Shown: positions 26,001 to 53,612 of the stretch, one piece after another
Numbering within the stretch: position 1 is the first letter of the stretch
Layout of the letters: every line of letters starts with the position of its first letter
Source of the DNA: Takakia lepidozioides
Taxonomy: Eukaryota > Plantae > Bryophyta
DNA length: 64,000 nt
Direction of reading: 5' to 3'
Assembly (NCBI GenBank): GCA_030704615.1
Contig: CM060731.1
Coordinates: 73,780,001 to 73,844,000 of the forward strand
The notes under the pieces: generated by a model
Told to the model about the DNA's origin: nothing
Seen by the model: the letters and a program-made list of their open reading frames with translations, nothing else
Databases searched by the model: none
Made by a program: the position numbers and the translations under genes

Positions 26001-26052
26001 TGGGCTTCAATCCTGGTTGGGAGCTTTCCCGCTCTGGGTCATCGACAGCCAT
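23036..26052 (-). CDS. SMP-30/gluconolactonase/LRE beta-propeller protein with an N-terminal signal anchor, multi-exon
   Basis: ANGM, FNSPNDIVVKSDGTIWFTDP, FSRPNGLAFSEDEKRLFVTDT, GVPDGIKVDTKGRVY, VVNLGFAG. Start MAVDD at 26052; probable last exon 23086-23036 (VTGAGLHYAATALGVH*). Confidence 0.85.
24606..24660 (-). repeat. Short dispersed element with a (CATTT)n tail, copy 1 (in a lactonase intron)
   Basis: Reverse complement of 26522-26581 with about 2 mismatches. Confidence 0.8.
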
Positions 26053-26521
26053 GACTAAACTACCTCCAACTCTAGGTTGCGTATTGTGGAACAACCGAAC
26101 TGTTAGACTGCAACTTAAAAACTATCTTTGCAATGAAATGGGTCACCTCAAGGCTGAAACCCTCTTACTCTCGCAAGCAAGAAACCCAGTACACCTCGTT
26201 CAGCCTATCAATCGAGATGGCCCTCACTTGAACCAAAATAATATGCTTATTTGACATATGATTTGTGCAACAGCGCCAATATCTCTCCCACCCAGTTCAA
26301 ATAGCTCTCTATTTCTCCACAGGCAGTCCTCAAATCCCAAGATTGAGATGTATCCGTTCAAACTTGGTAAAAAAAGGAAACCGGTATGGATTCCAACTGC
26401 GGAGTTCCTTCCTCTACAACACAATTAAACGACTTCAGCCCGCAAGGAAGGACATCCCAGCTCAATTCCAACCATATCTCTCTCTCCGCCTGTCCGTTAT
26501 ACACTTTCTTCCATTTTGTCC

Positions 26522-26581
26522 CATAAGCTCTACGAGCTTTCCGCGGACGTTATAAAGCACCATTTCATTTCATTTCATTTC
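26522..26581 (+). repeat. Short dispersed element with a (CATTT)n tail, copy 2
   Basis: CATAAGCTCTACGAGCTTTCCGCGGACGTTATAAAGCAC(CATTT)4C. Confidence 0.8.
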
Positions 26582-27264
26582 TTTGTTTCGCTAACTGAAC
26601 CCACAAGTGAACGCTTGTGACGTGACAAAAGAAAAAATGTAAGGAAGTAGAGTATGTCGTGACGACGGGAGATTGACTGTTGTCATCGAGAGAAGGACCC
26701 AAGTGCCTTAACTTGTAACCTCAGGCCCCATCTCTCTTTCCTGTCCAATCATCCAGCACCTTAGTCTAACCAGATCCTTCTCAGCACGTGGCACCCAGCT
26801 CATCACCTTCTTCACAGACCAACTTCGGAGGATTCTCGAACTCAGATTGTCGTTCTTGTAGGTAGCCTACTTACCGCATTCAAATCTTCTAATCGACCAG
26901 CCTTCATCTCAAGCGTCGTCGTCGAGGCACTCCCAAGAGAGAGAGACGAGAGGATGCTGCGAGACCAGGCCTATTTACCACGTGTCATTTTATATTCTTT
27001 TTTCCTTGACTGACCGTCTTGGAGGTCAATTGTAACATGCCAAATGTCATGTTTGAGGCCGCTCCGAATAACCTCCAGAGATTGGGCCATGTGGCAGACG
27101 TAAACTGGCCAACCTCTCCAAGCCCCTCCACGTGGTCATCCCTCAATATTAAAGTAAACAAGATTTCAAGAGAAGTTCCCTTTTCCCCTTTTTCCCTTTG
27201 TTCTCTTTTCTGTTTTTCTAAAAACAGAGTAGAGTTCCAACTAACCAACAGTCAGCAAGGCTGA

Positions 27265-32000: not shown

Positions 32001-33138
32001 TTACCTGGGCGTTGAGTTCTCCTCCAATTGTAATTGGGATGCACATATCCGGAAAGTTGTTCAAACTGGCAAGGGCAAAGCTCTGGGGCTCACTAAATTT
32101 TTCCACTGCAGAGGGGTCAACTCTGAGGTTAAGAAAACCATGCTTTGTCGCGTTATTAGACCTGCCTTGGAGTACGGATCTGCTATATGGGTTGATAACT
32201 CCAACCAGGCTAAGTCTCTAGAATCCATTCAAGTGGGGGTGCTTAAGGAGTGTATGTCAGCATGCTCCAAAACAGCCAATGTGCTGTTCGGGGTGAGTTT
32301 GGCATTCCGTCCTTAAGCTCCCGACGAGATGAATTCAAGGTCAGATGGTGGGGTCAGCTGCAACATATGCCCAACACCAGATATCCTAAGTTAATCGACT
32401 CTATATCTTGGAAACAGGACCGCCCTGTCAAACAGGCTAAGTCCTGGCAGAAGAGAGTAGAAGAGATCCTCAAGGACCTGGACCTGGATCCGCAAGTCTT
32501 GACCCTGCTGGATAAATCTGACTTAGAGGCTGTAGTGTCCTCAGCTATGTCTGTTGCCATGAGATTGTCTGATGAAAATGAAGTTAGGCAGAAAACTTCC
32601 CTGAACTTGTTTCCAGTCTGTGACATGGGGGAGGACATCTTGGATGACCTCAAGGGTCTACCCACTCTCGGCACTAGACTGAAATTTAAACTCAGGGCAG
32701 GAAGCCTACCTTTGAACAGCAAACAGAAGCAGAGAGGAAAGGGAGAGTGCAATTGCCCGTTGTGTGGGCAATCTGAAGACAGTATTCATTTTCTGATACA
32801 CTGTCCGGGGTTCTCTCACCAAAGAGAGGCTCTCTTCAAATCTATTAAGGGAATTGTGCCTGTACCCCTGTTTACCAACTTTGAAAGTCTCGAGGCTGAG
32901 CCAAAAGCCCAGGCCCTCCTGAGGCCTAGTTTTTGGGCAAATCACACACAGCAGATTGATGCTTGTGTGAAGGGATTTCTAGAGGATATCTGGAAAACCC
33001 GGATTAATTCTTTATATGGAGGTAAGTCTTACTACCAACGTCAGCCCCTGACAGAGGTAGGTTCTGTCCCTTTTGTTCCCGGTCAAACTGGGCGCGGGGT
33101 CAATGGCCACAAGGCTACGGCAAACAACGTCTTATGAG

Positions 33139-33178
<40 letters not shown>

Positions 33179-35524
33179 CCCCATCCCAGCTGTAAACCCT
33201 TATTGTGAGCCACTGTTACCAATATTTTTGGGTTGCACAACATCGCATATGCATGTGGTTTTTTGCCAACTTCCTTTCTCTATTCTTCTGCAGGCATCAA
33301 ATTAAGCACCCAGGTTGGCCATACACATTATTAACAAATTTGACTTATATATCAGACCTATACCTCTACCCCTACTCTGATGAAAATTAATTACTTGTAT
33401 CTTAATGAGATAAGCATCTTTATAATGAGATGGTTTATGGGTGTGGATGCAGCTCTTTGCATACGATTCAGTGAAGGGACTCTTGAGCCCTAAGGAAGGG
33501 AAGCCTACCTTTTTGGCATCTTTGCCGGTGTCACCTATGGCAGGGTCATGTGCAGGCATTTTATCCACTATTTGCATGTACCCTCTTGAGCTGCTGAAAA
33601 CTCGCCTCACTATTCAGGTAAGGACATAGGCAAACTCAAAATTTCTGCTGTGAATTTTCTCTTGGAATATCCACTCTGAACTGTCGATTGGTTCGCAACA
33701 GTATTCATAGATCCAAAGTAGAGCTAGTCAAGTCCATGTAAGTTCCTCGTAGTGTCCACTCTCTTCGTGTTGCCATAGTTCAGAAGTTAGGTTACTTCTC
33801 CTTCAGCCTTTGCCTGCTCGTCTTCCAAGTGTGAAGAGTGGCCTCTAACCTTATAGGGCAGCTGCTGTAGGTTAAGACCTCATGAGAAACCCTATTGAGT
33901 CATCACGTCTTCTGTTTTTCTGTTCTGTTCTAGGTCAACATTTCTGAGCAGGACAACAGGATTAGGCAATTCTTGAGTGTTGTTACAAAGAACATAGCCA
34001 CATTAAGGAAAGAGAATGTACTCATAAGATGTTGTTTTCCATAGCCTTGTGGCCATAGACCCTGCACCCAGTTTGGGTGGAAAGATTGTACTCATAAGAC
34101 GTTGTTTGCCGTAGCCTTGTGGCCATTGGGTGGAAAGAGAGGGAGAGAGAGTAATGTCCATTTTTTCCAGGGGGAAGTAGAATCGTAGTTAATCTTTGAG
34201 GTTATGTGGGTGTGTTTTGATATGGCCAGCCGGGTGAGTACCGAGGGATACTCAATGCCATATGGAGGATAATCACCGAGGAAGGAATCTTGGAGCTGTA
34301 CCGTGGCTTGGGTCCAAGTGTGATTGGAGTAATTCCGTATGCGGGTGTGAATTACTATACCTATGATTCTTTGCGCTCACTCTACAAGAGGGTGAGTAAG
34401 ACAGATAGTATTGGTAACCTTCAGACTTTGTTGATTGGTTCTTTGGCGGGAGCTGTGGCAAGCACAACCACATTTCCATTAGAGGTGGCGCGCAAACAAA
34501 TGCAGGTGGGCACCCTTTCTTGTTTCATGATTCGTCAAAGCTATGATGAGTTTGTGGGATTATGGGTCCTTATACCTCTTGTGCAACTTGAGAACAAACA
34601 CACATTGATTTCATTACAAAAGCATGAAGTGTCTAAGTTGCCATTTCCAAATTACTCCCGTGGACTGTTCTGAAACAAATCTCTGGTCAGGCGATGGATT
34701 TTCCATGGCTTATGGGGTTGGTAAACTCAAATCTAGAAGGGTGTTCTATGCTTGTTGTTGGAGTCATAAAGCTCTATACACGTCCCTCGCATGAAGCAAG
34801 AGGGGACAAATTGTGAGGGGAGGGAGGTCATACCAACCGGCAACATGTACATCCAGGATAAGCTTCTTAGACGGAGTATATCTAATGTAGCAGTGGACAG
34901 TTTATGGTCTTAGATGAGTGATTACAATTGCTTTTTCTAATATTCCAACCTTGATTGATTTTTAAGATGCAATAGTCCCCACAGTGGCCATATTGTCCCA
35001 GGAGGAACTAAAAGGAGGTCATAGTATTCAGCTGTCCATAGTTGAAGCAGACTCTGAACACTTCAGAAGCTTCTAGTGACTGTCTTTCCTATTGTTGGCT
35101 AGCACTGACAAGCAAAGTTAATCAATTATTCGCCATCAAGAATGTGAATGTTGACCAGATTCACCATAAAAGTGCATATTGGAAAATGAAACTGTACTTG
35201 AGAGAAAGGGCATAGACAAGTATAGAAGTGGTATAAGCAGTATGATGGGTATACGATAATAAGTAAAGACGATTGAAGTGCAAAATGAGGTTAAATACAA
35301 CAATAACATTTGAGTTGTGGTGTGTGCAGGTAGGAGCAATAAAAGGGAGGATAGTGTATACTAGCACATTGGATGCCTTGAGGGGCATTATGAAGGAACA
35401 AGGGGTTAAGGGTTTGTATCGAGGCCTAGGGCCCAGCTGCCTGAAGCTGATGCCAGCTGCAGGGCTCTCTTTCATGTGCTATGAAGCACTGAAGAGAATT
35501 CTGTTGGAAGAAGAACGAATTTGA
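29034..35524 (+). CDS. BT1: Mitochondrial-carrier-family adenine nucleotide transporter, Brittle1-like; exons 29034-29885, 33453-33617, 34230-34505, 35330-35524 (~495 aa)
   Basis: RRLLSGALAGAFSRTVVAPLETIRTHLMVGS, GLFRGN..NVIRVAPSKAIE|LFAYD, YPLELLKTRLTIQ, FPLEVARKQMQVGA, GLYRGLGPSC.KLMPAAGLSFMCYEA. All introns are phase-0 GT-AG. Confidence 0.93.
30449..33143 (+). mobile_element. 5'-truncated, inactivated LINE (RTE-X-like) in BT1 intron 1, flanked on both sides by (CT)n
   Basis: RT motifs KAGGPDGI, GNYRGITLL, QAGFR, FLDVKKAYDTVWRDGLW, GVAQGCTLSPLLF, FADY (for FADD), YTYLG; C-terminal CPLC..EDSIHFLIHC. Stop at 31408, frameshift near 32280. (CT)n at 30420-30448 and 33144-33176. Confidence 0.92.
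34018..34126. repeat. Small direct duplication (~39 bp) in BT1 intron 2
   Basis: GTACTCATAAGA.GTTGTTT.CC.TAGCCTTGTGGCCAT occurs twice. Confidence 0.8.
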
Positions 35525-39011: not shown

Positions 39012-39381
39012 TTGCAGGTTTTGAAGAAAGCAAGGAGAAGAGCTTTCCCCGCCTCTCCAAACTCTGGGGGCGTAGTTGATGTAATAACAAGCAGATTCTA
39101 GTATTAAATTGCACGCCAGCAGTTACAACATGTCTCGCATTCAACTCAAGAGATCAGAGTAGAGAGGTCATATAAAGGGCACCAGTGCTGCTGTAGGTAG
39201 GAGTTCCAGTGAGGTTGGGGATGGGAGGGGGAGAACAGTTGTCTATGGGCCCAAACTCGATGCACATCATACACATGCATACAAAACAGTGATAAAGAGT
39301 GAAAACAGAGAATGGATCAAATCTTTGAACCAAATGCAGCTCCATGTCCATGCACTACAAAAAGATGGGGAGGATCAAGAG

Positions 39382-39755
39382 GCCTCTCATTTTACAATAA
39401 TTGGGACGTTATGGCGCACGCGCGAGCTGACCGGTGGGCCCCGCGCACGGACGCCCGGCTGCCCGGCCGCGCCCACCTACTGCCGCCCCTACCAGCCGTA
39501 CCGCGCTCCGCCGCGCCCCCAGTCCGGTGCGGCCAGTCCGCTGCCCTTGAGTCCAGTTCCCTCGGTCCGCCAAACCGCCAGTCTGTCGGCCAGTCTGCTC
39601 TGCACGCCAGTCCGCTGTGCCAGTCCCCGCAAGTCCACCCAACAGTCCGTTGTGCCCGTCTGCTGCCCCAGTCTGCCAGTCTGCCAGTCTACCAATCCGC
39701 GCCGGCCGAAGGATTTGGATCGTCCATTCTGAGAAACCCATCCGCGTCATCCATG
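39382..39755 (+). repeat. Left long TIR
   Basis: Inverted similarity to 52383-52652 extends to GATCGTCCATTCTGAGAAACCCATCCG..CATCCATG. The left copy has an extra ~80 bp at 39422-39500. Confidence 0.92.
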
Positions 39756-40051
39756 CCAGTCCGCTGTGCCAATCCCGGCCAGTCCACCCAACAGTGTGCC
39801 CGCCAGTCCGCCGCCCATGAGTCCGCTTTCCTCCAGTCCACTGATGATGCCGCATCTGGACCGTCCGTTCACAAATGCCATCTGAGCCCTCCATTTTTAG
39901 GGCATGAATTGAAACCTTATCCCTGCCGTCTGCCACTTGTCAGCGCCGCGAACGTGCGCATTGATGCTCCTTGCACATTGTCCATCGTGTCCAGTGTATT
40001 GCGGCGCGTTTCTTGCAGGTTCTGAAGCGTGTCCTCTATGCTATACAGGGC

Positions 40052-43000
40052 ATGGATGTGGAAGCAGAAGGTGATGATATACTAAAAACGAGATGCTGGA
40101 TTATACGGCCTCTTCGACAAAGTTTGCAAACACCCAAACCAGGACCCTTCAACAGGAAGGACCTCCAATGGAAGAGAGACACGCAATATGGTTATATGGG
40201 TGCCAGACAAAATGTTCTGAAGGCCTGCATACCGTGGGATAGAGTTGATGACCTTCTCCTTGGAGAGGAGAGTTTGGTGGACTACCCCACTCAGTTTTGG
40301 GTGAATGTCCATACTAAAGTGCAACCCGGCATGCTAAAAGAGCCGAGAGCCAACAGTTCTCTGAACAGTTTTCATGCTTCCAGAAGTCGATAGATATCCA
40401 TTGTGATTTTTATGTCCAGGTATCAATGCTGCTATGGTCCTGATGACAAGCGCACCAACAATGCGATAGTGGATGATCCGAAACTGAAACGTGGATGACC
40501 TCTTCTGGGTGCTGGAACATCTCACCCTCATAAAGGCCCAAGGAGAAAGAAGTCGGAATATGGAGAGTCTTACAAGCGTGGTTGCCAGTGCTGTTTCAAG
40601 GTCCAGCAATGTTATCTCGACCCCGACATTTGTGTTCTCACGTACTACAACAATATGGAGCATACAGACGCGAAAGGGAACCCCTGTCATGGGAAGTCCG
40701 TTGAGTTCAAGAACATTCGCCACGCCTACGCACCACACATTAGCGAGGAATTGAAAGCATGGGTCATGGAGTGTCTGTGCCGAGGCTTGTCAGTCGCCCA
40801 AATCATGATGGAACATAAAGAGCACGTCATGAACAACACCAGGTTGGGGGATGCATGGACACGGGACGATTTTTTGCTAGAGCAGGATGTGCGCAACCTG
40901 GCCGAGAAACGGGCGTGGCAAACATTCAAAAAACATGCCAACGATGCGGAGAATGTCCGCATGTGGAAAGACCAGAACCCGAAATCGGTCTTCTTCTACC
41001 AAGAGGAAAAATTGGCGCCAACATTCAAGCACTACGATGGCGACTTAACATTCACAATCGGCATACAGACTGAGTGGCAGAAGAAGCGAATGCTTCAATT
41101 AGGCCATGCCCATATTGTTGCATGCGATGCAACCTTCGGGACAAATCACCACAAGGTACTCTTCATCCCTTTCACAATTTATCCACTTGCAGAAGTAGTG
41201 GATGTACGCACACTGGCAGCATCTGACATTCTGCATTTGAACAGTTCCCATTGTACACGTTGATGGTCTTCGACGAGTGGCTTAACGGTATACCAGTTGC
41301 GTACATCGTATGCGCGCGTGAGCGGACTACAGACCTGGTGTCGTGGATGGCAGCCTTGCGGAACTCTCTCCTCGCAGAAATGCCGGACTGGCGACCCAAT
41401 GCCTTCATTATGGACGATGCCGACGCCGAAATAAACGCCATTACGTAAGTTTCACGTACCCTCTTGTACACTCGCGTGCAAGTCCGTCGTCTGCGTCCAT
41501 TGTCTGTCTCTTCGGCAAGTCCCCTACCATACAACGTAGTCCTGGCTGCTAGTCCGGCCCATTCATTTCTGCAAGTCTGTTGGCAAACCAGTCCGCTGGT
41601 AATGTCCTCTAGCGAAGTCCGCTGGAAGACTCACTTGCGCAAGTACGCTGCAAGGTCAGTCTGCTCGGGTGTGCTACCAGCAACATCTGGGTAAGTCTGT
41701 TGCCGGTCTCCTAAGGGTAAGACCATTGGTAGGTCAGTCCGCCGAAGGGGACTGTTCGCAAGCAGTCCGCTGCAAGACTCACGTGCGTCAGTCTACTGCA
41801 ACCTCAGTCTGGTCGAGCAAGTCCGCTCGCAGGCGAGTCCGCCAGATGGGACTGTTCGCAAGCAGTCCGTTGCAAGACTCACGTGCCCAATCTGCTGCGA
41901 CCTCAATCTGGTCCAGCAAATCCGCTGGCAGGCAGGTCCGCCGGGGGAGGCTGTTCGCAAGTAGTCCACTGCAAGACTCACATGCGCCAATCTGCTGCGA
42001 CCTCACTCTGGTCCACTGGCAGGCGAGTCCGCCGGAGGGGACTGTTCGGAAGTCTGCTGGCAACCCAGTCCAGTCGATATGCCCTCTGGCCAAGTCCGTT
42101 GCAAGACTCACTTACGTAAGTCCGCTGCGAGGTCAGCGTGGTCAGGTCTGCTGGCGGTGTCATGAGGGCAACACTCATGGCAGGTCAAAGTGGGCGAGTC
42201 TGCTGCCTGAATCCGTTTGGAACAGACGAGCAGACCAGTCAACTAGACAGTCTACTGGGTTAGTGCCCAAATCCACCGGCCAAGTCCTCTTCGAAGTCTC
42301 TCATGTGGGCATGTGTACTTTGCAGGGCGGTTTTTCGAGGAGTGCTGATTTTCCTGTGCCTTTGGCATGTCCGGCGGGCTTGGGTGAAGCAATCATGCGC
42401 GAAAACCAAAGATCCTATCATTGCCGCAAACTTGCTGAAAGATATGGGAGACCTCATGTATTGTAGAGGTGGACCAATCAATCCCAAAGAAGGTCTTGCA
42501 TGGGTAGCAACAATGCTCCGACGTATGAGAAAGAAATATCCGAATGGGCATGAATTTATGGACTACATCGATGAGGAATGGCATCCTAAAATAGCAATGT
42601 GGTGTACAACAGCTCGCCATGTTCCGCATGCCAGTCAAGACAGCAATGCTAGCATTGAGGCATACCATGGAAACTTGAAGGCAAGACTGAGGATGGGGAA
42701 AGGCAAAATGACTGGGCGTAGAGTGGATTGGCTCATATGGGAACTCACAGGCCGTGTGCTAACATACTACCGGTATGCAATTCACCTGAAGACGCACGGA
42801 TTCATAAGGAATGACAAACAGGAGAAGTACATGTCCAGTTCTGTGCTTGCGGCACGCGATATCCCAGCTTGCAATGTCACTCTTCCGTTCCATCCTGGGC
42901 AACCAGCCTATGTTCTAAGCACCAATCACCCAAACACAATTTACATTGTTTACAACCCCGGATGCGAATGGGCTTCTTGCACTTGCCCATGGGCAATGAA

Positions 43001-43573
43001 GGGCAATTTGTGCAAGCATCAAGTCCGAGTCATGAAGTTGCTTCATCCACACTTGCAGGATGGACTCATAGTGCGCGCTTGTGGCACGGTGTTGGGAACC
43101 ATTCATGGAGGATTGCATAATGTGTTTAGGGTTCATGCAAGTGTTGGCGACGAAGAGGTTTTGGGAAATGCAACAGAGGGCCCTTCCACAGATGACTTCC
43201 CCTATGATGCGGAGCCTGTCCTCATACCATCCTCCATGGATGAAGAATTTGCAGACATACTTCGCATTGTTGGGGACGACAAATACCTGCAGAAACATGT
43301 GTTGTCTTCTCTTCGTATCTGTAGGGGGGAGTTTGTTGATATTCTCGCCAAGAATGTTGCAGGAATGTTGCACCCTACGGCAGCAAAGAGCTTCCGTCTT
43401 GTACATGACAACAATATATGTCGCTGAAAAGGAAACGGGATTTCGTTGAGGCATGGAAAACGCGACCCAGGGTCTTACGCAAAACAGGGAAGAGGGTTGG
43501 TGCCCCAACACCTGCAGCACACATATACTCCACAATCCGGAGAGTCGCAGACCGTATACCAGTTTTAAAGTAG
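40052..43573 (+). pseudogene. MULE-like DDE transposase with SWIM zinc finger; exons ~40052-40370, 40420-41155, 41245-41444, 42326-43573
   Basis: IVACDATFGTN (D1), FIMDDA (D2), CLWH (CxxH), SNASIEAYH (E), CTCPWAMKGNLCKH (SWIM). In-frame TGA at 40496-40498, AT slippage frameshift near 43415, and no clear donor for intron 1. Confidence 0.9.
41735..42050 (+). repeat. ~100-bp tandem array (about 3 units) in transposase intron 3
   Basis: CTGTTCG(CAAG.AGTCC..TGCAAGACTCAC.TGC) recurs at ~41751, 41851 and 41950, with a partial unit at 42041. Confidence 0.9.
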
Positions 43574-43688
43574 AGTAGGAAATGTAAGAAATGGTACAGT
43601 ATCATTCTCCCCATGAAATAAAATTTCGGCGGTACGATTGCATGTGCACCAGACGTCCAACCTGCCTACCAACCAGCCTGGTAAACTA

Positions 43689-43815
43689 GTCTTCTGGCGT
43701 CTGAACCAGTCTGCTCAATCAATCTTCTACCGTCTGATCCAGTCTGCTCAACCAGTCTTCTGGTGTCTGAACCAGTCTGCTCAACCACTCTTCTGGTATC
43801 TGAACCAGTCTACTG
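43689..43815 (+). repeat. 33-bp tandem repeat (about 4 units)
   Basis: Units of (GTCTTCTGGyGTCTGAACCAGTCTGCTCAACCA)-like sequence. Confidence 0.9.
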
Positions 43816-44459
43816 TACCAGGCTGGGACTCAGTCTTCAAACAGTCTGCTGAGCCAGCCTTCTCAGTCTCCCGGTTCTGAACGTGCCTGCACCTGGCTGA
43901 CCAGTGAGCCTCATGCGGTCTGCCCATCAGACTAGCCATTCTCAGCACGGTGGACTCTCATTACTCTGCTGACCAGACTTGGCAGTCTACTGGCCAATGC
44001 CATCCGCCTGTACTATACCACTCCGGTGACTCTCGACAGTCTGCTCACCAGTGCAAACTCATGGTTCCCAATCACATCTGCCAATCTGCCGGACTCGTCC
44101 CAACTCCTCAATCTGTCGGACTCTCGTCAGTCTGGCGACATTGCCATCTGTGTGCTCACAAGCCTAGGCATACCCTCTTCCCGTACTCTGGCAGTCTGCT
44201 GACTCTCGGCTGTTTGCTGACCAGTGGACTCCCTTGGTATGTTAAATAAAACGATTGTGTGTGCAAAGGTAAGTCCGCTTAACAACATGCAGTGAATTGG
44301 TCACAAATCTACAACGACTACTCCACACTGCACTCATATGCGACCAATAGGATGTGTATACAAAGTCATATTTTATTTCGTTGCAAATGCTCAAAAGCAT
44401 ACTTACATGACAAATGCGTCTTATGGTGCACCTCTAACCTCGGACCCAGATGGATATCT

Positions 44460-47400
44460 ATGAGGATACTGCTTTCTCAGCAGCACTTAAACCAGTGAAG
44501 ATGTACTTAAGACACTGCATCCGTTGGTCAAGTGCAAACTTGAACGTAAACCAGTGTTTCGTGAAAGGTACTCCTCTCTCTGCCCTTTTAGAAGAGGTTC
44601 GAGTATGCCCAGTTTGTAGCCATTCATAATATCCTTAGATGAAGGACATGACATAAAACCCGCATTCCCAGCTGAATGGCTGTTGGGGCACTTCAAGCTG
44701 GTTGAACTGAAATGCCCTAACCTCCTCCCAACCCGGTGAATCAACACTGTAGCCTAAACACTCCGCATGCAGCTTCCGTATCCATGACAAAACATATGGG
44801 CAACCATGCAAAGACTCGATGGAGTTCATGTGAGTGTAGCAGCCTTTCCGTACGTCGATGACAACAACACTCCAGTGCGCCCTGCAAGACGAATCTCATG
44901 AGTCTCACGGCAGCAGACCACTCAGCAAATTGTTTGATCCTGCTCAGAGGCTTGCGAAGTATCTCTCTTGCATACTCTAGCCTCTGCAATTGGGCCCACC
45001 AATTGCCTCTCCAGCAGACTCTACAGACTCCCACACTGCACGGGTCCCACTACACTCAGCCGACTCGGCAGAGTCACGACTCAGCAGACTCAGAAGACTC
45101 ATCACCCAGCAGACTCGGCATAATGAGCAGACTCAGCAGACTCGGCAGATTGAGCAGACTCAGGGCTGAGTGGGCAGACCGAGCAGACTGTCCTCATTCA
45201 AAAAACTGGGCAGATTTGCTAGACTGAGCAGGAGAGAGGCAGGTGTGAACGTAGTGACGTCATTCAAAAGACTGGCCCGACAAAACAGACTGGGTATGCG
45301 AGATCTTACTCCTCCACAATCGGAACGATTATATGATGGCAGTCTTTTATGTCTTTGCCGAGCCGAGGGACGCTCCAGCAAGAATGCAGATACTCCACTA
45401 GCCTTTCCCGTGGCCCGTCCCAATGTGTCATCATACGAGACCACGTTGAGGCTGGCAGAAGAGCAACAGTACTTGAGTACTTGTCTTCGACCGTCTTCTC
45501 ATAAAAACGACACCACAGCTCCAGCATTCTATCTGTGCACTCCGACTCCACCGTCTCAAGTGGCTTCAAGTCCGGAGGCCCGATGGAGCACTCATACCGG
45601 GGGTCGCCTTCATAAAAGTGAACCATGCAATTGTCGGCCGCGACATTCCATCGCAGGGCCGTGGCAAAACAAGAACCCAACCTGTACACAGACCACGGCC
45701 TTGTGTGAAAACCCATGTACGCAACGGTCTGAGCGGACTGACTCCATTCAACAGACTACCCATACCGAGCGGACTGAGCGGACTCGCCAGACTCACCAGG
45801 CCGAGCGGACTGAGCATACTCACACTTCTGAGTAGACTGGAGTGACCAGACTCAGCAGACTGGGAGGACTACTCACTGGTGCATTTCTTGCTGAAGAACC
45901 ACTTCCTTGTCCGTATCCAATGCCATTTTTGCGGTCCTTGTTCATGAAGACAACGGACTTGCCTTTCTTCGCAGGTTTCATGGCAACAGGACCCTCCCGA
46001 ATTTCCTGAGTCTACTCCACGACAGTCCGCTTCTTCGCTCTACTTGTGCCTAGGGATTCGGCGACTACTGTGGCCGGGTTCGATTCAGCAGACTGACGAA
46101 GTGATGCGGTCCTGCTTCGCAAGACGACCGTGTCTGCAGGCTTGTTTACATTTGCAGAACCTATATTGGCAGCCTCATGGGACGCATGCGTTGAACTAAT
46201 CCGTGCATCTGTTGGCGTTGTAAGTAAGTCACCTTTTCTGGTTGTGGAGCCAACGTGAGCAACATTGGCGGGTTGTGGAATTGCCTGGGAGGGAAACGGT
46301 ATCCTCAAGTCCAGTAGGTACAACAGATCCTGTCAATACACAGAAATTGAACATAAATCTGAAATCACAGAGGTGGAAGACGGCAGGGCACAACCTGTAC
46401 GGCGTCATTGGAAGGAAGCGACTGGGCAGACTGTTCCCCTGCTTGAACGTCAGTCAGTCTGTGTTCCTCAGAGCGGTTAGCCTGGTGCTCAATCTACTTG
46501 CCGCTATGGTCAGTCTGCTGTCGAGTCTGGTGGATACTCTCGTGTGCGGGGGGAACGGCATGTTGGCCCTTAGTTTGTCCATGTTCGGCATCGGTCTGCT
46601 GCTCAGTGTCCTCAGTCTGACCAATCTGATGCTCAGTCTGCTCACCGCTCTGGTCAGTCTGTTGTCGAGTCTGGTGGACACTCTTGTGGGCGGGGCAAAC
46701 GGCATGTTGACCCTCCTTCAGAGGGCCTGTTCAGCGTCAGTCTAATGCTCATTGTCCTCAGTCTGGTCAGTCTGGTGCTCAGTCTGCTTTTTGCTTTGGT
46801 CAGTTTGGTGGTCGGTTTGCTCTTGCAGGGAGGAGATCAATCTATCAACTTGCAAGTCAACTGTGTCTTCAGGGTCTGATGGAGAAAAAGCTTGACTACC
46901 GCCGACATCTAAATTATCCGCAGCAACTACATCGTCTAGTTCTTCAGTAAGGTCAATGATACGGGGTTGAGTTCCCATATTGCGATCAATCACATAACAA
47001 TCATCTATAGCTTTTGCAAGCAAACGAACCAAAACCGGGCTGAGCTGAATGGAAATAGTTGGCAGGCCATGGGTCACTGGAGAAGAATGGTTTATCGGTG
47101 CCCGGCTTATATCCTCAAACGATGCGCCAATATGTGAAGATGGCCCGGCGGGAAAAGAAGACTCCGTCAATGCACTGATAGAACTCCGCACAAATTCAGA
47201 GACAGGGTCCCGTTGAGGCCAGTGCAGCCGACTCTGTTCAACGAGCCAGGATCCAGACTGCTGGACAGGAAGTGTAGTTGGGTCCTCCGAGTCAGTGTGG
47301 TCGTGAATCTGCTAGACAGTCTGCAGGGCACTGTCATTGTGATGACTACTTTCAATCTGCTGGACGGACTGCTCAATGGTATGCTGCACAGTCTGTTGGT

Positions 47401-50400
47401 GCACAACCAGGTCATCCATTTGTAGCTCGGTCTGCTCATTGGTATGCTGGACGGTCTGCTTGACAGTGACGTCATCGGTATGCTGCACGGTCTGGTGTAG
47501 AGGCAGTCCTTCAGTCTGCTCGCCGGTTTTCTCATGAGTCTCCTCGTCCTCGGTGTGGCCTGTAGTGCGCCCACTCTCCTGAACAGTGGCTGGGATAGTG
47601 TTGACAGTCTGTCCATGCTCTTTTTGTTGCAGTGGGTCAGTCTGCTGAGCAATGGCGTTGTCAGCAGTCTGCTGAACGGTGTCATGGAGTTCATGTAACG
47701 CCAGCACAACATCTCGTGCACCTCTGGCAAGGGAATCGAAAGCACACTGCACGTGCTCATCTAAATCGGACATTCCTGAAACAAATGAGTTGGACAAAGT
47801 AAGTCTGACATGATGGTGAAAGAAAAGACCATGAACTTCACAACGGTCCAGAAGAAGGCGGCATTACCTTCTAGGAGGTTGCCAATGAGACCAATATCTT
47901 GGATTTGGTGTCCCAAGCATGCTCCATCGAGATGGCAAATCGCTGGCATGCGGTTTTCAAATGGGGAGCCGCACCATAGGACTTTGAACACATCTGGTCT
48001 GTTCAACACAATATCGAACATTGCTCGCTCAATTACCGCAGCAAACCATTGCAACGCCTCATCCACAACACTCTTCTTACCCGCATCCGAATCTGAATGA
48101 AACAAATACTTCCTCAAACTTTGCAGGTCCTTTACCAATTTACTGTATGAACGGAAATTGCCGAACTGCATCCATCGATGGTGAAGGAAAGAATTAGCAA
48201 TGCGATCAAAGTATTTTTCAGTAATTCCAAGCAAGTGCTTTCCCCGCACCCCAAAGGTGGGATGTGCCATGGGCATATGTCTGAGTTCCTGAGGCCATGG
48301 GTCATCCATGAGGATTAATTGGACAAGCAGTGGTGGGGCATTTTGGACCTTCGTGGCTGTTAGGGCCACAAAATGTGCGCTTTCGAGGACTTCATTCGCT
48401 TCTGCCAAAGTAAATTCCATGGAATAATGAAAGGGAACAAAAGGCCACCGGCCGTCCGTGACAATGCGATGGAGCTCATTATACCAATCCACATTGGCAT
48501 TGACTTCCCCCACCCTCAGACGGGCAAGTGTCAGGTCCACAGCTTCGGGATCAATGAGCGGCAATGGCGAGCGCCAAACTCCAAAAAGTCCCTTGGTGGT
48601 CGTGACAATGTGAGTCTGCTGGCTGGGAGTCCACAGGACAGCAGTGTGGTGGATGGGCGTCTTCTGGGTGGCAGTTTACTGGTTGGGAGTCTCCTGAATA
48701 GCAGTCTGCGGGCTGGGAGTATGCAAAGCAGTCTGCTAGATGGGAGTATGCTGGACGAGAGTCTGGTACATGGGAGTGTGCTGGACAAGACTGCGCTGAC
48801 TGTGAGTCTGGTGGGAAAGAGTCTGCTGGATGCCAGATTGGGTGAGGTCTGTGTCCACCGAGTCTGCAGTGAGTATGGTGTTGACCGGGGAGTTGGCGCG
48901 TGCTTTGTCTGCAGAGTCCAGTGCTGCTATGGCGTCTGCTGAGCCAGGGTACTTAAACAAGATGTACTCCCGCACCCGCTCCACTTCCCGGCGCACCGCA
49001 TTCACTACTAAAGGAGGGTCGGAGCTCACCGTCCGCCAAGCACACAAGGCCTCCCGAATACTGGCTCGTTCATCCTGGTATATGACAGAAAACCCAAAAA
49101 CTCAGCATCGGACTCACTAGCAGCAGACTCACCAGCATCGTGGCACAGAACAAATGAACCAGCGGACTCCAAGGACTGACAAGCAAGTCCACAAGCAGGG
49201 GACTGACTAGCAAGTCCACAAGCAGACTGACGCAGCAGACCGAGCAGGTAGACTGAACCAGCAGACTCTATGACAACAGACACCAACTGTGGGGACAGAC
49301 TGGGCATTACCTCGTCGTCGTCGTTGACACAAATGTCCTCCTCATCTTCAAGGGAGCTCAACCAATTTTCCTCCGCTGCTCGGATGGTTCTGCTAAGCTG
49401 TCCGGACTAGGCAAAACTGTAGAAAAAACGGAAGAAGTCTGCATCGTCCACTGGTGGGCACACCGATGGGAGAAGCCCAAATGGTATGAGGCACAATGTG
49501 CCAGAACAGACTCCACTGGTAGTCTCTTTCGACTGGACTTCGTCCACGTGAACCCTCGACTGGTAAGGCAAGACAATGTCGACGGGAGATGAGACACCTC
49601 CCAGACCTGCGAATTCATCATTCCGAATGATGTTTGCAGACGGCTCAGCAGACTGGCTCTCACTCAAAGTACTGATGGTCTGCATCTGCTGCGTAGACCG
49701 TCTCCCTGGCACAGCCCGTGACACTTCCCGACTGCCTTGAGGACGAGTCTGATGTTGAGATTTCGCCCTCGCCTCCCGAGCAGACCTTGCAGCCTTTTCT
49801 CTTTCCTTCTTCTGGGCCCCATCACTAAGTTTCCTTTTTCTGGGACCCACAGGCGATGGCAATGTCAGATCATGCACATCTTGCATTGAAACATCCGAAC
49901 CCATCCCATACCGTGCGCGCACCTCCGCCAAAGTGCGGGCCTTTGGGTTTGCGCCACGGAGTCTGGCGGTGGCCGCATTCACCACCCTCATTGAACTTTG
50001 AACTGGCCACGACTTGAAGCCAAGTGGGATATAGCGCTTGTTTTTGCAACCCGTGTCAACACAATGGCGGTTTAGCTGCACTTTGTCCTTGATAATTTCA
50101 CTACAGAAGGGACAGTGGAGCTTATCCTTCTGCCAGTTGGAGTCTGCAGGCTTGATTGCGCGGAGGTCTAAGAATGCTTCGACTATTTTCACATCATACT
50201 CCTCAGGTGAGTACCAGTACCTTCGCTCCTTTAGCCTGGACTTGTGCATGAAATGCAACCAGTCTGCTCCACCCTTTGCACAAACATCCTCCATGGCTGC
50301 AGAATCATACAAGAGATGCAGCGGCAATGAGCGACAGACAGACTAAGAATAAGAAAGCAGAGAAGAGCGGAAAAGAGAAAGAAACCAAAGCACAAAGTAC

Positions 50401-50571
50401 AAAGAGGAAAGCTCACCGGGCAACAAGCGACGGTTGTTGCGACGATTCGGTGCTCATGGGACTGTCCGCGCCTCGAAAAACTAACATGCGCAAAGGAAAG
50501 CGGGCTCGCACCAATGGGAGGTGGACAAGCCCTAAACGAAACAGTGCGAAAGAAGTCCAGCGGGAAGTAGA
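44460..50571 (-). pseudogene. Large spliced accessory gene of the transposon: Zn-finger-like, unknown domains, Gln-Thr repeats, C-terminal Ulp1/C48 protease (may extend 5' to ~52056)
   Basis: Successive minus-strand ORFs (50327-49407, 49361-49311, 49047-48736, 48564-47868, 47777-47312, 47191-46742, 46323-46012, 45716-45309, 44881-~44460) mostly join through GT-AG introns or single TAG/TAA stops. Motifs CPFC..LNRHC, IIVPIVEE|AHWSVVVID...MNS, VPQQPFSWECGFYV. Confidence 0.8.
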
Positions 50572-52382
50572 CCCTACATGTGCGGAGTGACGTGGCGAGA
50601 TTTCACTGGCGCCCCTTTTTGGCCGCCAACGCATTAAATAGTTGCAGACCCCTGACACGTGCTGGTGGTATGCCACTGCACAGACAGTCCAGCAGACGGG
50701 ATGAATGGGACTATCGTCAGTCTGCCGTCGTCGCATTCATCAAGTCCAGCAGACTTACTCCTGATGACAAAGATGGCCGAGCAGACCCAGTACCCTCCAC
50801 AACAGACTCATATGCCACCGCAATGACAGACTGACGACTGAGGTTAAGCGAACTGACGAAGAGACTAAGGCGAGTGCGGAGTCTGGTGCGGAGTCTGATG
50901 ACGTGCTGCGACGTGATTGGGCCTCCTTACCGCCGTCGCTGCATTTATTGCGTCCAGCAGACTTAAACCTAATGACATAACGGCCGAACAGACCCACTGC
51001 AAACAAACTTGTGCAACAACAGACTCGTATGCCACTGCACGGACAGTCCAGCAGACGGAAGGTTCAACAGACTGACGAAGAGACTGGCGCAGAGTAATTT
51101 GCGCGACAACAGACTGATTTCTAACAGACTAATATCCTAAAAGACAAAGTATCCCCTAGGCGGCCGGGTGATCCGGGAGTAAACTGTAAACCGCGTCCAG
51201 CAGACTTACACGTGATAATAATCACGGCTCAACAGACCCAGCGCAAACAGACTTGCGCCACAGTAGACTGACTTTGTGACAGTCCAACTGACTGATATCA
51301 GAAGAGACGGACAGACCAGCAGTCCGACGGCTCAGCAGACTCACGACAATGCGGATAATTAAAAGGTAGTAGTTAAATGGACTCATATCCGAAGAGACGG
51401 ACTTCCAGCTGACCAACGGTTCAACAGACTGACGAGAGAAGAGACTTCGGGGATATGACGAGATAAGACACTTCGGAATTTGGCAGGCAGTGACGGCCCA
51501 GTAGTCCAGTGAAGAACAGACTCACGCCACACCAGACTTGTATCCTTACAGACCAACAATCCAGCAGACCAGACAGATATCCCATCAGAACCACGCTTGG
51601 CGTCGCCGTCATGCCGTGGTTACATTTCATCCGTCCAGCAGACTTGCATATGCCCATACTCATGGCACAACACACTGCTTAGAGAAAGTACTGACAAAGA
51701 CGCAGTCGAAGAGCCTGTTGATCCACGCGCATTTGCAGTCATAAGGACCTCGAACATCCACAAGCAACGTGAATCCACATCTCTCAGGCTACGTCTCTTT
51801 TCCCATTGTCCAGTTTTCAAAGAGACGGTAGTGGTTGAGATGTGATGTTTCAGGAGGTGAATCTGGATGTTTGAGGACCTTTGGACTGGATCCTGTTCCG
51901 TTCACACTCTCCGCAGTTCTCAGACATGTGGTGATAGAGACGTCCTCCCCTGAACAGTCTCATTGGTGGACATAAATTCTGCAATGTATACACGCCCCCA
52001 CGTGCATATGCTTCCGCGATTTCCGCTATCGTGTTACCAATGGTTTCCTGCTCCATACGAAGGACCTCGGACTCGGAGACACACCATAAACCGTAAACGC
52101 ATGCAATTTTTCCACATATCGTCCTAAAAAATAAGCACGTCAACACAAAATGAAGGCGAAAATAGTGGAAGCATATGCACGATGGTGGCTGTAGAGCTCC
52201 GCCAGCCCTCTCATGTTCAGGCACACCCTTCATCGTCATTAAAATCGCCATAAACAAGAACAACAGCCGCATGCGTGCAAAGTCACCTCCGCAACATTGG
52301 ACAACAAAGAGCCGCAAGAACGAGACAACAAGAACGAGTGGGTGAGTTCGTGGCAGGGTGTTACGATCTTCCATGCCCTAAA

Positions 52383-52652
52383 CATGGATGGCACGGATGG
52401 GTTTCTCAGAATGGACGATCCAGATCCTTCGGCCGGCGCGGACTGGCAGACTGGGGCAGCAGACGGGCACAACGGACTGTTGGGTGGACTTGCCGGGACT
52501 GGCACAACGGACTGGCGTGCACAGTAGACTGGCGGTTTGGCGGACTGAGCTCACGGGCAGCGGACAGGCGGGCGGACTGGCCGCGCCGGACTGTGGGCGC
52601 GGTGGAGCGCGGGCGTGCGCCATAACGTCCCAATTATTGTAAAATGAGAGGC
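52383..52652 (-). repeat. Right long TIR
   Basis: Reverse complement of 39382-39755. Confidence 0.92.
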
Positions 52653-53612
52653 AAGAGCTTTCCAGTGGTATCTTTATATTTTAAAATGGTTATAATCCCA
52701 AGTTACAATGAACAAGGTTCACCATGCACCACAATAGGAACATGGTGCGTCAAAATAGGATCAGGATATAGGACTTGCACCCTAATTTCGAGTTGAAATT
52801 CTGGTTTCGGTTTAGTAGTTTTGTTGCCTGTGACTGAATAATTGACAATATAAACATTAAAGTTGGGGGGCATGGCCTTGGTCAGTACGAGCATGCCTTT
52901 GGGGACCCACAGCAACTGTCCAGCCCTGTCCAGGGACCAACTCGGAGGGTTGAGAAGAGAGCGTACGCTGTCAGTCTGCAGTCGGTAGTATCTCATTAAC
53001 GTTCAATCTTTGTTGCCAGCACGGATTTATCAATGCAGGACGCCATGTGCTCGGTTGGTACACGGCAGGCCTGTCGTAGTTGTTCATGGATATGAGTCGT
53101 TTGTCTTGATTGCACTTGGTTTGGGTGTTTCACATTGGCAAGGAGTACGCGGTCTCGTGATTCTGTTGGGAGCAATCTCTTCTCTCTCTTCCTCTCTGGA
53201 TTTGCGGATTGTTTGGTCTGTGGGTCTTCGTTGTCAGGTTGGTGTCACTTGGGTTGGGCCTACTGACCAACGTGATATTTCTTTTCGCTGTATGATCTAA
53301 GTGTCGCTCTCAGGTTCCTTCAGGAAGTTTCTATCCTCTCAGCTGTGTACGAATACAGCGACTCTCTCCCCCGTGTTTTCGCAGTCAATTGTTAGTGTCT
53401 TCTTTTGAGTTGGGGTTTGTGATTAGTTATATTTTACAGGCCTGCCTTTGCGAGATCCTTTTGCCTGGACGTCCTCGCAATTCCAGAACCCAAAAGCTTT
53501 GAGTCTCTACCGGAGCCACTTTTCTCTTTCCTTCTCCGCAATGCAGTCTGCGTCTTAGTGCCACGGGAATCTTGACTTCTCTGAAAAGTTCAAGCAATCC
53601 AGCTTAGTTATC

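What the first reader, a model, noticed from the sequence alone, without database searches (positions are those of the whole stretch)
40052..43573. Mobile-element version of the domesticated plant SWIM genes (At4g13970/At1g60560-like) with an intact DDE triad
Seen: the transposase reads IPWDRVDDLLLGE...YPTQF...YQCCYGPDD...KRGCQCCF...H.DAKGNPCHG...YAPHISEELK...TRDDFL...VFFYQE...FTIGIQTEWQ..RMLQLGH...DATFGTN..K|FPLYTLMVFD....IPVAY...RVDWLIWEL...VYNPG...CTC.WAMKGNLCKH. From memory, this is collinear with the conserved angiosperm SWIM zinc-finger genes At4g13970/At1g60560 (IPY.RVDDFVRGE, YWCSFGPDD, GIQTEWQLQQM, DSRFGTN, RADWLV.KL), which are not TIR-flanked and have lost the CxxH. Here the gene lies between TIRs with a TSD and keeps D, D, CxxH and E. 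Inference: this is the transposon lineage from which those host genes were domesticated.
Basis: partly seen in the sequence, partly recalled or inferred. Interest (0 to 1): 0.82.

Follow-up and report, generated by a model that had tools for sequence, protein, structure and literature searches.

The report
Transposon cousin of plant SWIM genes
A decayed copy of a high-copy "jumping gene" in a moss-like plant genome encodes a cutting enzyme that matches, from end to end, a deeply conserved but unstudied gene family of seed plants, so those plant genes very probably began as a transposon enzyme of this kind, although this lineage is a distant cousin and not shown to be their direct ancestor.

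Summary
Window 40052-43573 (+) is a four-exon Mutator-type transposase gene inside a 13,271-bp element (39382-52652) with about 270-375-bp terminal inverted repeats. D, D, CxxH, E and the SWIM finger are all present. The copy is dead: it has an in-frame TGA at 40496-98 and a 1-nt frameshift near 43414. The "TSD" is only a 5-bp repeat (AAGAG).

DNA runs show a very high-copy family, and at least one other copy lacks the frameshift. Every exon matches conserved seed-plant SWIM proteins in collinear order at 26-44% identity (best-scoring exons E 1e-39 to 1e-41). These proteins form three paralogue groups present from Ginkgo and Amborella to eudicots.

The seed-plant proteins form one clade (100/99) in two exon-level trees. 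The window's gene sits in a separate clade (98/98), with an intact TIR-bearing element from a metagenome contig. No MuDR, FAR1 or MUSTANG outgroup could be obtained, so the tree is unrooted.

Arabidopsis At4g13970 and At1g60560 were never listed by the searches.

Verdict: kinship at family level is supported; "the progenitor lineage" is not shown. First readers of this scan noted the same reading on other copies in this genome (s1-461813, s1-474579).

The parts
39377..39381 (.). Left copy of the only flanking direct repeat (AAGAG), a candidate 5-bp target-site duplication
   Evidence: AAGAG abuts both termini; the 9-mers GATCAAGAG and AAGAGCTTT do not match
39382..39755 (+). Left terminal inverted repeat, terminus GCCTCTCATTTTACAATAATTGGGACG, rich in AGTCYG words (forward orientation only)
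   Evidence: four collinear blocks, 93-96% complementary to 52383-52652; terminus unique to the two ends
40052..40318 (+). Transposase exon 1 (ATG at 40052; IPWDRVDD)
   Evidence: matches residues 8-72 of host proteins. The end of the exon is inferred: it is the only phase-0 GT donor
40319..40393 (+). Intron 1 (GT..AG), inferred
   Evidence: a stop at 40391-93 lies directly before the exon-2 frame; L007 also has a break here
40394..41155 (+). Exon 2: YQCCYGPDD, basic linker with in-frame TGA at 40496-40498, CxC..H..CH motif (40580-40693), helical region, first catalytic D at 41126-41128
   Evidence: the linker is open in the relative L007
41156..41244 (+). Intron 2 (GTACTC..AACAG)
   Evidence: exon 2 ends at host residue 311 and exon 3 starts at 312
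41245..41444 (+). Exon 3: FPLYTLMVFD, second catalytic D in MDDADAE (41413-41418)
   Evidence: (Pfam MULE, E 0.004)
41445..42325 (+). Intron 3 (GTAAGT..TTGCAG), holding a 99-bp tandem repeat at 41736-42015 and 18 forward AGTCYG words
   Evidence: exons 3 and 4 are contiguous in L007, L005, L006, L008 and L010
42326..43427 (+). Exon 4 as it now reads: CLWH (42357-42368), catalytic E (42657-42659), SWIM finger (42978-43019), premature stop at 43425-27 after a 1-nt frameshift near 43414/15
   Evidence: Pfam SWIM 20.1 bits, cut-off 19.6; an extra C after 43414 in another copy
43418..43573 (+). Displaced C-terminal tail (MSLKRKRDFVEAW..) in another frame, homologous to the tails of relatives; stop at 43571-73
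   Evidence: L007 ends ..NMSLKRRRDFLERRR
44460..50571 (-). Accessory gene region of the element, with a Ulp1 (peptidase C48) piece at 44635-44829; subject of another finding
   Evidence: Peptidase_C48 20.9 bits, cut-off 20.7; two searches found no other transposase domain in the element
52383..52652 (-). Right terminal inverted repeat (AGTCYG words in reverse orientation only)
52653..52657 (.). Right copy of the AAGAG direct repeat

Best explanation
The stretch is the transposase gene of an aged, inactive copy of an autonomous Mutator-superfamily DNA transposon, 13.3 kb long with long TIRs and a convergent accessory gene carrying a Ulp1 protease. The family is very abundant in this genome, which unchecked scan notes call moss-like. 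The encoded enzyme would have these parts: a conserved N-terminal region with a CxC..H..CH metal-binding motif and a helical domain (inferred to recognise DNA, perhaps the AGTCYG words that fill the TIRs); an RNase-H-like DDE core with the Mutator CxxH motif; a C-terminal SWIM zinc finger; and a basic tail. It would cut and paste the element. This copy cannot make it, because it has one nonsense codon and one frameshift. The same protein family includes three conserved paralogue groups of seed-plant 'SWIM-type' genes. Those genes are one clade, are highly conserved from gymnosperms to eudicots, and have each lost the H of CxxH or the first D. The most economical reading is that they descend from one old domestication, before seed plants diversified, of a transposase of this family. 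Mobile members of the family survive in bryophytes and probably in Taxus. The window's lineage is a collateral relative, not the demonstrated progenitor. Shown: anatomy, homology, copy number, motif states, host-clade monophyly. Inferred: DNA-binding role, direction TE to host, timing.
For: Element and gene anatomy. Family membership: Pfam SWIM at threshold and weak MULE on the window's exons. MULE passes its cut-off in close kin: L007 30.8 bits, P0136 44 bits, P0175 59 bits, against a cut-off of 27.6. High copy number and decay: 2798 and 1151 contigs of two DNA runs lie on 3.7 kb at 90-99% identity. The window differs from other copies in the runs mostly by carrying A or T where they read G or C, and another copy restores the frame at 43414. 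An independent mobile relative: L007, an 8842-bp contig bounded by 130-bp 99% inverted repeats, has an uninterrupted gene in the same position and orientation, 41% identical to the window. Kin in multi-copy clusters: P0132 has 31 members and Taxus P0164 has 18 members on many chromosomes. Homology to host genes over the full length and in collinear order: (exon 2b against Ginkgo P0093: 41% identity, E 2e-41). The host family is conserved across seed plants (Ilex against Ginkgo 64%, against Amborella 69%) in three groups. Motif states. Trees: host clade 100/99 in both the exon-4 and exon-2 trees; window clade 98/98. There is no other transposase domain in the element.
Against: No outgroup was available, so the root and therefore the direction of descent are inferred, not shown. 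Deep branches are weak and differ between the two trees: Taxus groups with the host clade at 93/79 in the exon-4 tree only. The flanking repeat is 5 bp, not 8-11 bp. Many 'transposon-like' relatives may not be mobile: eight Riccia paralogues are single-copy, and the two loci checked have no TIRs within 10 kb. No RNA evidence was found. The Arabidopsis proteins were never seen. The organism is unknown to me; 'moss, likely Takakia' is only an unchecked note of the scan. The N-terminal fold prediction was mediocre (pLDDT 69.6) and matched nothing.
Confidence: 0.78

Rival explanations
1. One reading: this very lineage is the transposon from which the host SWIM genes were domesticated (host clade nested in, or specifically sister to, the window's clade).
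For: Same family and full-length collinearity. Identity to the slowly evolving Ginkgo host protein (41-44% in exons 2b and 3) is as high as to bryophyte kin.
Against: In both trees the window is outside the host clade and is not its neighbour. The window's 13-member clade (98/98) excludes all host proteins. Nearer candidates are Amborella P0188 and the Taxus multi-copy lineage, but only weakly and in one tree.
Confidence: 0.1
2. Reverse direction: an unrelated transposon captured a host SWIM gene (transduplication), so the gene is cargo and not the transposase.
For: The 5-bp flanking repeat is odd for Mutator. Many relatives are single-copy genes without TIRs.
Against: No other transposase domain exists in the 13.3-kb element. 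The gene keeps D, D, CxxH and E with Mutator-like spacing. An independent element 41% diverged (L007) carries the gene complete, at the same distance and orientation from its own different TIR. Kin pass Pfam's MULE threshold. Captured genes are usually fragments, and this one is full length.
Confidence: 0.05
3. Ordinary MuDR/VANDAL-type element whose likeness to the plant SWIM genes is only the generic MULE core plus SWIM finger.
For: Ulp1-carrying accessory gene and long TIRs as in KI-MULE/VANDAL. The atlas look-alikes are generic MULE/SWIM clusters (leads only).
Against: Homology to the host family covers the N-terminal 300 residues too, which no Pfam model (FAR1, MuDR DNA-binding domain, WRKY) recognises at the thresholds searched (E 0.01 to 1). 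Pfam's MULE model sees the window's core only at E 0.004, while host proteins score E 1e-39 to 1e-41 per exon.
Confidence: 0.05

Closest known systems
MUSTANG (MUG) and FAR1/FHY3/FRS genes: Mutator-derived host genes of flowering plants (PMC4948706, PMC3435246)
   Same: Host genes that keep the Mutator transposase architecture (N-terminal DNA-binding region, MULE core, SWIM finger), are conserved and lack TIRs, while related mobile MULEs exist.
   Different: This is a different family: neither Pfam FAR1 nor the MuDR DNA-binding domain matches. The host clade already exists in gymnosperms (Ginkgo, Cryptomeria) and Amborella, so it looks older than the angiosperm-age MUG and FRS events. Neither At locus appears in the main text of any paper of the held library as transposase-derived nor in the supplements of PMC5715367.
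KI-MULE / VANDAL-type Mutator elements carrying a Ulp1 (peptidase C48) gene (described in PMC4948706, PMC6446971)
   Same: A long-TIR DNA transposon with a MULE/SWIM transposase plus a second gene with a C48 protease domain, and short words repeated through the ends.
   Different: The transposase belongs to a separate clade with its own N-terminal region. The flanking repeat in this copy is 5 bp instead of 9 bp. The host is a moss-like plant rather than an angiosperm.
Animal ZSWIM1/ZSWIM3 (Pfam PF21056, ZSWIM1-3 RNaseH-like)
   Same: SWIM-finger host proteins with a Mutator-like RNase-H core. PF21056 passes its cut-off in three of the kin scanned (P0175, P0136, Ginkgo P0093).
   Different: The match is only domain-level. 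The window's exon 3 scores E 0.18 on that model. No orthology is implied.

Membership tests
Mutator superfamily (MULE) DNA transposon | DDE transposase with the MULE domain | tested here: inconclusive
   The window's exon 3 scores Pfam MULE at E 0.004, 17.9 bits, below the cut-off of 27.6. Kin pass it: L007 30.8, P0136 44.1, P0175 59.1 bits. D, D and E are present with spacing of about 62 and 125 residues.
Mutator superfamily (MULE) DNA transposon | C/DxxH motif between the second D and E | tested here: met
   CLWH at 42357-42368, in a column nearly invariant across kin.
Mutator superfamily (MULE) DNA transposon | Long terminal inverted repeats | tested here: met
   39382-39755 against 52383-52652, 91-96% identity.
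Mutator superfamily (MULE) DNA transposon | 8-11-bp target-site duplication (PMC6446971) | tested here: not met
   Only AAGAG (5 bp) is repeated at this copy. No second copy was available to me. A distant relative, L062, has TGCTCACCTG / TGCTCACTTG, 9 of 10 matching.
Mutator superfamily (MULE) DNA transposon | Repeated family (mobility in the past) | tested here: met
   Thousands of contigs at 90-99% identity in two DNA runs of one sample.
Seed-plant SWIM-type gene family (S1-S3; presumed to hold At4g13970/At1g60560) | Full-length collinear homology, including the N-terminal IP.xRVDDF / YWC.(Y/F)GP(D/E) / RGCxCxF..H.D..G..CHG / YAPxIS region | tested here: met
   All five exon pieces hit in order, at 26-44% identity.
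Seed-plant SWIM-type gene family (S1-S3; presumed to hold At4g13970/At1g60560) | Falls inside the host clade | tested here: not met
   The host clade has 100/99 support and excludes the window in both trees. The window is kin of the family, not a member of the host clade.
Seed-plant SWIM-type gene family (S1-S3; presumed to hold At4g13970/At1g60560) | At4g13970 and At1g60560 belong to this family | not tested
Arabidopsis proteins were not among the best 120 hits listed. AT4G13970 is described as 'Zinc ion binding' (PMC6265505), the name carried by P0087, P0389, P0399, P0404, P0411 and P0419.
Domesticated (host) gene as opposed to transposon | No TIRs, low copy, loss of catalytic motif | tested here: not met
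   The window's gene has TIRs, a high copy number and all catalytic motifs. It is the transposon state, though this copy is broken.

The most novel reading that the evidence does not exclude
The three conserved seed-plant SWIM-type gene groups (probably including At4g13970 and At1g60560) are an unreported domestication of this Mutator lineage that predates the split of gymnosperms and angiosperms. Mobile members of the lineage survive today in bryophytes. Several host groups still keep all three acidic catalytic residues (S2, S3, Ginkgo S1), so a retained DNA-cleaving activity is not excluded.
Probability: 0.55. Interest if true: 0.7.

Novelty: new member of a known kind. Interest (0 to 1): 0.6.

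Why it matters
Domesticated Mutator transposases (FHY3/FAR1, MUSTANG) are important plant regulators, and their origin is dated to angiosperms. This case differs. A family annotated only as 'SWIM-type' or 'zinc ion binding' is conserved at 60-80% identity across seed plants in three paralogue groups and has no studied function. Here it gains a bona fide mobile relative with the same architecture from end to end. That gives a concrete origin for the family, an older date for a plant transposase domestication, and testable predictions. The N-terminal CxC..H..CH region should bind DNA. The host proteins differ from the transposase mainly by loss of the CxxH histidine or the first aspartate. It also explains why Pfam-based screens would miss these genes: in the angiosperm members scanned, only the SWIM finger, or nothing, is recognised.

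Tried and rejected
- Outgroups: no MuDR, FAR1, MUSTANG or ZSWIM sequence could be obtained. The big HMMER search lists only the best 150 of 2086 hits, all inside the family. A relaxed family-HMM scan of all 0.8 Mb of fetched loci and the window found no distant MULE. The trees are therefore unrooted.
- Arabidopsis: two word searches, with an S1 and an S2 query, listed 120 hits each without Arabidopsis.
- Other copies for the TSD: the terminus occurs only twice in the window, the flanks are unique in the window, and an exact scan of metagenome contigs found nothing.
- TIRs around relatives: none around Riccia P0175 or P0184 or the contig L001.
- Expression: no RNA run holds the stretch, and the one presumed-RNA run that was laid gave nothing. 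This is no evidence of silence.
- N-terminal fold: AlphaFold2 on a 28-row alignment gave pLDDT 69.6, and Foldseek against the PDB gave no match at E <= 0.001.
- Rfam: no RNA family in the window.
- Accessory-gene homology between the window and the fetched loci, including L007: none at E 1e-5.
- Spliced model: I did not build or search a joined protein. Each exon was searched, aligned and placed in trees by reference on its own. In one script exon rows were only printed on one display line.
- The ICU11 paper turned out to be irrelevant.
Full report
**What is there**

The + strand between 40052 and 43573 carries a split gene. I modelled four exons from splice signals and from where homology to relatives starts and stops:
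- E1 is 40052-40318.
- E2 is 40394-41155.
- E3 is 41245-41444.
- E4 is 42326-43427.

Intron 2 (41156-41244, GT..AG) and intron 3 (41445-42325, GTAAGT..CAG) are well supported. E2 ends at residue 311 of the Vitis protein P0018 and E3 begins at 312. E3 ends at 377 and E4's match begins at 385. In five metagenome relatives E3 and E4 are contiguous with no intron. Intron 1 (40319-40393) is inferred from the only in-phase donor.

Each exon was used by reference on its own.

**State of the gene**

All catalytic landmarks are present:
- first D at 41126-28 (DATFGTN)
- second D at 41413-18 (MDDADAE)
- CLWH at 42357-68
- E at 42657-59 (IEAYHGNLK)
- SWIM finger at 42978-43019 (Pfam SWIM 20.1 bits, cut-off 19.6)

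The copy is nevertheless broken. An in-frame TGA sits at 40496-98 in the basic linker between YGPDD and KRGC. That stretch is open in the relative L007. The frame also slips near 43414/15, so the conserved tail MSLKRKRDFVEAW.. lies in another frame, ending at 43573. Relatives read ..NMSLKRRRDFLERRR straight through. One contig of a DNA run carries an extra C after 43414 that removes the shift.

**The element**

The gene lies 670 bp inside a 13,271-bp element, 39382-52652. Its ends are inverted repeats of about 375 and 270 bp in four collinear blocks, 93-96% complementary. The 27-nt terminus occurs only at those two places.

The only direct repeat abutting the ends is AAGAG, 5 bp. The 9-mers do not match, so the TSD expected of Mutator (8-11 bp; PMC6446971) is not met in this copy. 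I had no second copy to compare.

The rest of the element holds a convergent accessory gene with a Ulp1/C48 piece and no other transposase domain. The word AGTCYG occurs 10.3 times per kb inside the element against 0.6-0.7 outside. It is forward-only in the left TIR and reverse-only in the right.

**It is a transposon family, not a lone gene**

Contigs of two DNA runs from one sample cover the 3.7 kb with 2798 and 1151 pieces at 90-99% identity. At many sites all or nearly all of the laid contigs differ from the window's letter. The window mostly has A or T where the other copies have G or C (A>G 41, T>C 27 of about 150 listed changes). This is the pattern expected of an old, cytosine-deaminated copy. 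No RNA holder was found, which says nothing about silence.

**Relatives**

E4 alone finds only fragments and two longer named proteins, because of the search's length filter: Adiantum P0010 and Ilex P0011. P0011 leads to more than 400 proteins of a seed-plant family of about 690-700 residues. They are 60-80% identical from Ginkgo, Cryptomeria and Amborella to eudicots, and are annotated 'SWIM-type domain-containing', 'zinc ion binding' or 'SWIM zinc finger family protein'.

A profile search of 1.84 billion cluster representatives gave 2086 hits, 153 of them at E <= 1e-30. Names for the long hits show three seed-plant groups:
- S1: Ilex, Vitis, Amborella P0073, Ginkgo P0093.
- S2: Pterospermum P0158, Hevea P0282, Magnolia, Amborella P0151 and gymnosperm P0121/P0130; 870-1140 residues.
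- S3: Perilla P0141 and Ginkgo P0125.

There is also a divergent Amborella gene (P0188). Outside seed plants the hits are:
- eight single-copy paralogues in the liverwort Riccia sorocarpa
- genes in Calypogeia, Adiantum and Diphasiastrum
- a Taxus cluster with 18 near-identical members on many chromosomes
- many unnamed contigs from metagenomes; several accession series recur among them, and from memory I take some for peat-moss or bog samples (not checked)

**Collinearity**

Each window exon hits host proteins in order. For Vitis P0018 the matches are E1 to residues 8-72, E2a to 92-110, E2b to 107-311, E3 to 312-377 and E4 to 385-608. Identity across all exon/host pairs is 26-44%. The best pair for E2b reaches E 2e-41 and the best seed-plant pair for E4 E 2e-39.

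The N-terminal 300 residues, which carry an invariant GCxC..H..CH pattern, match no Pfam model at the thresholds searched (E 0.01 to 1). The likeness is therefore specific to this family and not just MULE core plus SWIM.

Arabidopsis itself was never listed, so the two locus names remain unverified. AT4G13970 is called 'Zinc ion binding' in PMC6265505, and that name recurs in S1 and S2.

**Motif states**

The window and the Adiantum P0136 and Riccia P0175/P0170 proteins keep D, D, CxxH and E. The host groups differ:
- S1 of eudicots and monocots keeps CLWH but has HS in place of the first D.
- Amborella S1 has CLWR, and NS in place of the first D.
- Ginkgo S1 has CLWR.
- S2 has CFWR or SFWR.
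- S3 has SLWR or CLWR.

Pfam recognises MULE in the transposon-like kin and nearly in Ginkgo S1. In the angiosperm host proteins it finds only SWIM or nothing. This may be why these genes are absent from the lists of exapted transposases I could read.

**Mobile kin elsewhere**

L007 is an 8842-bp metagenome contig (bog origin is my recollection of the accession series, not checked) bounded by 130-bp inverted repeats, 99% identical. It carries an uninterrupted gene 41% identical to the window's, at the same distance and orientation from its end. Its protein is nearly identical to the 31-member cluster of P0132.

L062 has 42-bp TIRs and a 10-bp flanking repeat with one mismatch.

By contrast, the Riccia loci of P0175 and P0184 and the contig L001 show no TIRs within 10 kb. 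Part of the 'transposon-like' diversity may therefore be immobile.

**Trees**

In the exon-4 region (51 rows, 344 columns, IQ-TREE LG+C20):
- S1+S2+S3 form one clade at 100/99.
- Amborella P0188 and the Taxus multi-copy lineage join that clade at 93/79.
- The window sits with P0001 (99/95) inside a 13-row clade (98/98) that holds L007 and P0132.
- The liverwort, fern and lycophyte lineages form an unresolved comb.

In the exon-2 region (28 rows) the host clade is again 100/99, but Taxus moves away and the window's position is unresolved.

No outgroup could be obtained, so the trees are unrooted. The data fit 'host clade sister to or nested in this transposase family'. They do not show that the window's lineage is the source.

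**Mechanism**

Shown: the parts listed above. Inferred, from the general behaviour of Mutator transposases:
- The N-terminal metal-binding and helical region binds subterminal repeats.
- The DDE/CxxH core cuts and joins.
- The SWIM finger and basic tail help DNA or protein contacts and nuclear import.

The fold prediction of the N-terminal part was mediocre and matched nothing.

**Known versus new**

This works like MUSTANG and FAR1/FHY3 with their related MULEs (PMC4948706). It is a different family, and it appears older, because it is already present in gymnosperms. The element itself resembles Ulp1-bearing KI-MULE/VANDAL elements.

First readers' notes of this scan gave the same reading for two other copies in the same genome (s1-461813, s1-474579). 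A follow-up on a third copy (s1-459675) calls the organism a moss, likely Takakia. I did not test that.

**Verdict**

This is a real, decayed Mutator-type transposon whose transposase belongs to the same family as a conserved, unstudied seed-plant gene family. Domestication from this family is likely. Direct ancestry of this lineage is not shown.

Noticed in passing
window 44460-50571 (- strand), Ulp1 piece at 44635-44829: Convergent accessory gene of the element with a peptidase C48 (Ulp1) match at threshold. None of the other ORFs scanned in 45.1-52.4 kb passed Pfam's cut-off (only a weak Nop25 match). It has no detectable homologue in the related element L007.
   Followed up: partly
window 39382-52652: The word AGTCYG / CRGACT occurs 10.3 times per kb inside the element against 0.6-0.7 per kb outside. 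It is strictly forward in the left TIR and in intron 3, and strictly reverse in the right TIR.
   Followed up: partly
window 41736-42015; also L052, L063, L079, L055, L066: A 99-bp tandem repeat sits inside intron 3 of the transposase gene. In several related metagenome loci, arrays of about 100-bp repeats in opposite orientations lie just upstream of the last exon.
   Followed up: no
L007 1-8842: A contig bounded by 130-bp, 99% identical inverted repeats carrying an uninterrupted homologue of the transposase. It looks like a complete, possibly active element.
   Followed up: partly
L062 5721-16963: An 11.2-kb relative with 42-bp TIRs and a 10-bp flanking repeat (TGCTCACCTG / TGCTCACTTG). Its transposase pieces contain stops.
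   Followed up: partly
P0144, P0156, P0159, P0167, P0170, P0175, P0177, P0184 (Riccia sorocarpa); L003, L004: Eight mutually divergent, single-copy paralogues in one liverwort. Some keep the full D, D, CxxH, E set, yet the two loci checked have no TIRs. They may be further domestications or old immobilised copies.
   Followed up: partly
P0184 (Riccia) and P0293 (Diphasiastrum): A liverwort-lycophyte pair (100/99) that has lost the first catalytic D in both members. It is possibly a separate, very old host gene of the same family.
   Followed up: no
P0164 cluster (Taxus chinensis): Eighteen members at 90% identity or more on many chromosomes, with DATFGTN kept. This is a probable recently amplified lineage inside a seed plant.
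   Followed up: partly
window 33084-34128 and 24595-26587: Two further inverted-repeat pairs (49 nt at 98% and 68 nt at 88%, about 0.9 kb apart; 66 nt at 89%, 1.9 kb apart), probably small TIR elements.
   Followed up: no
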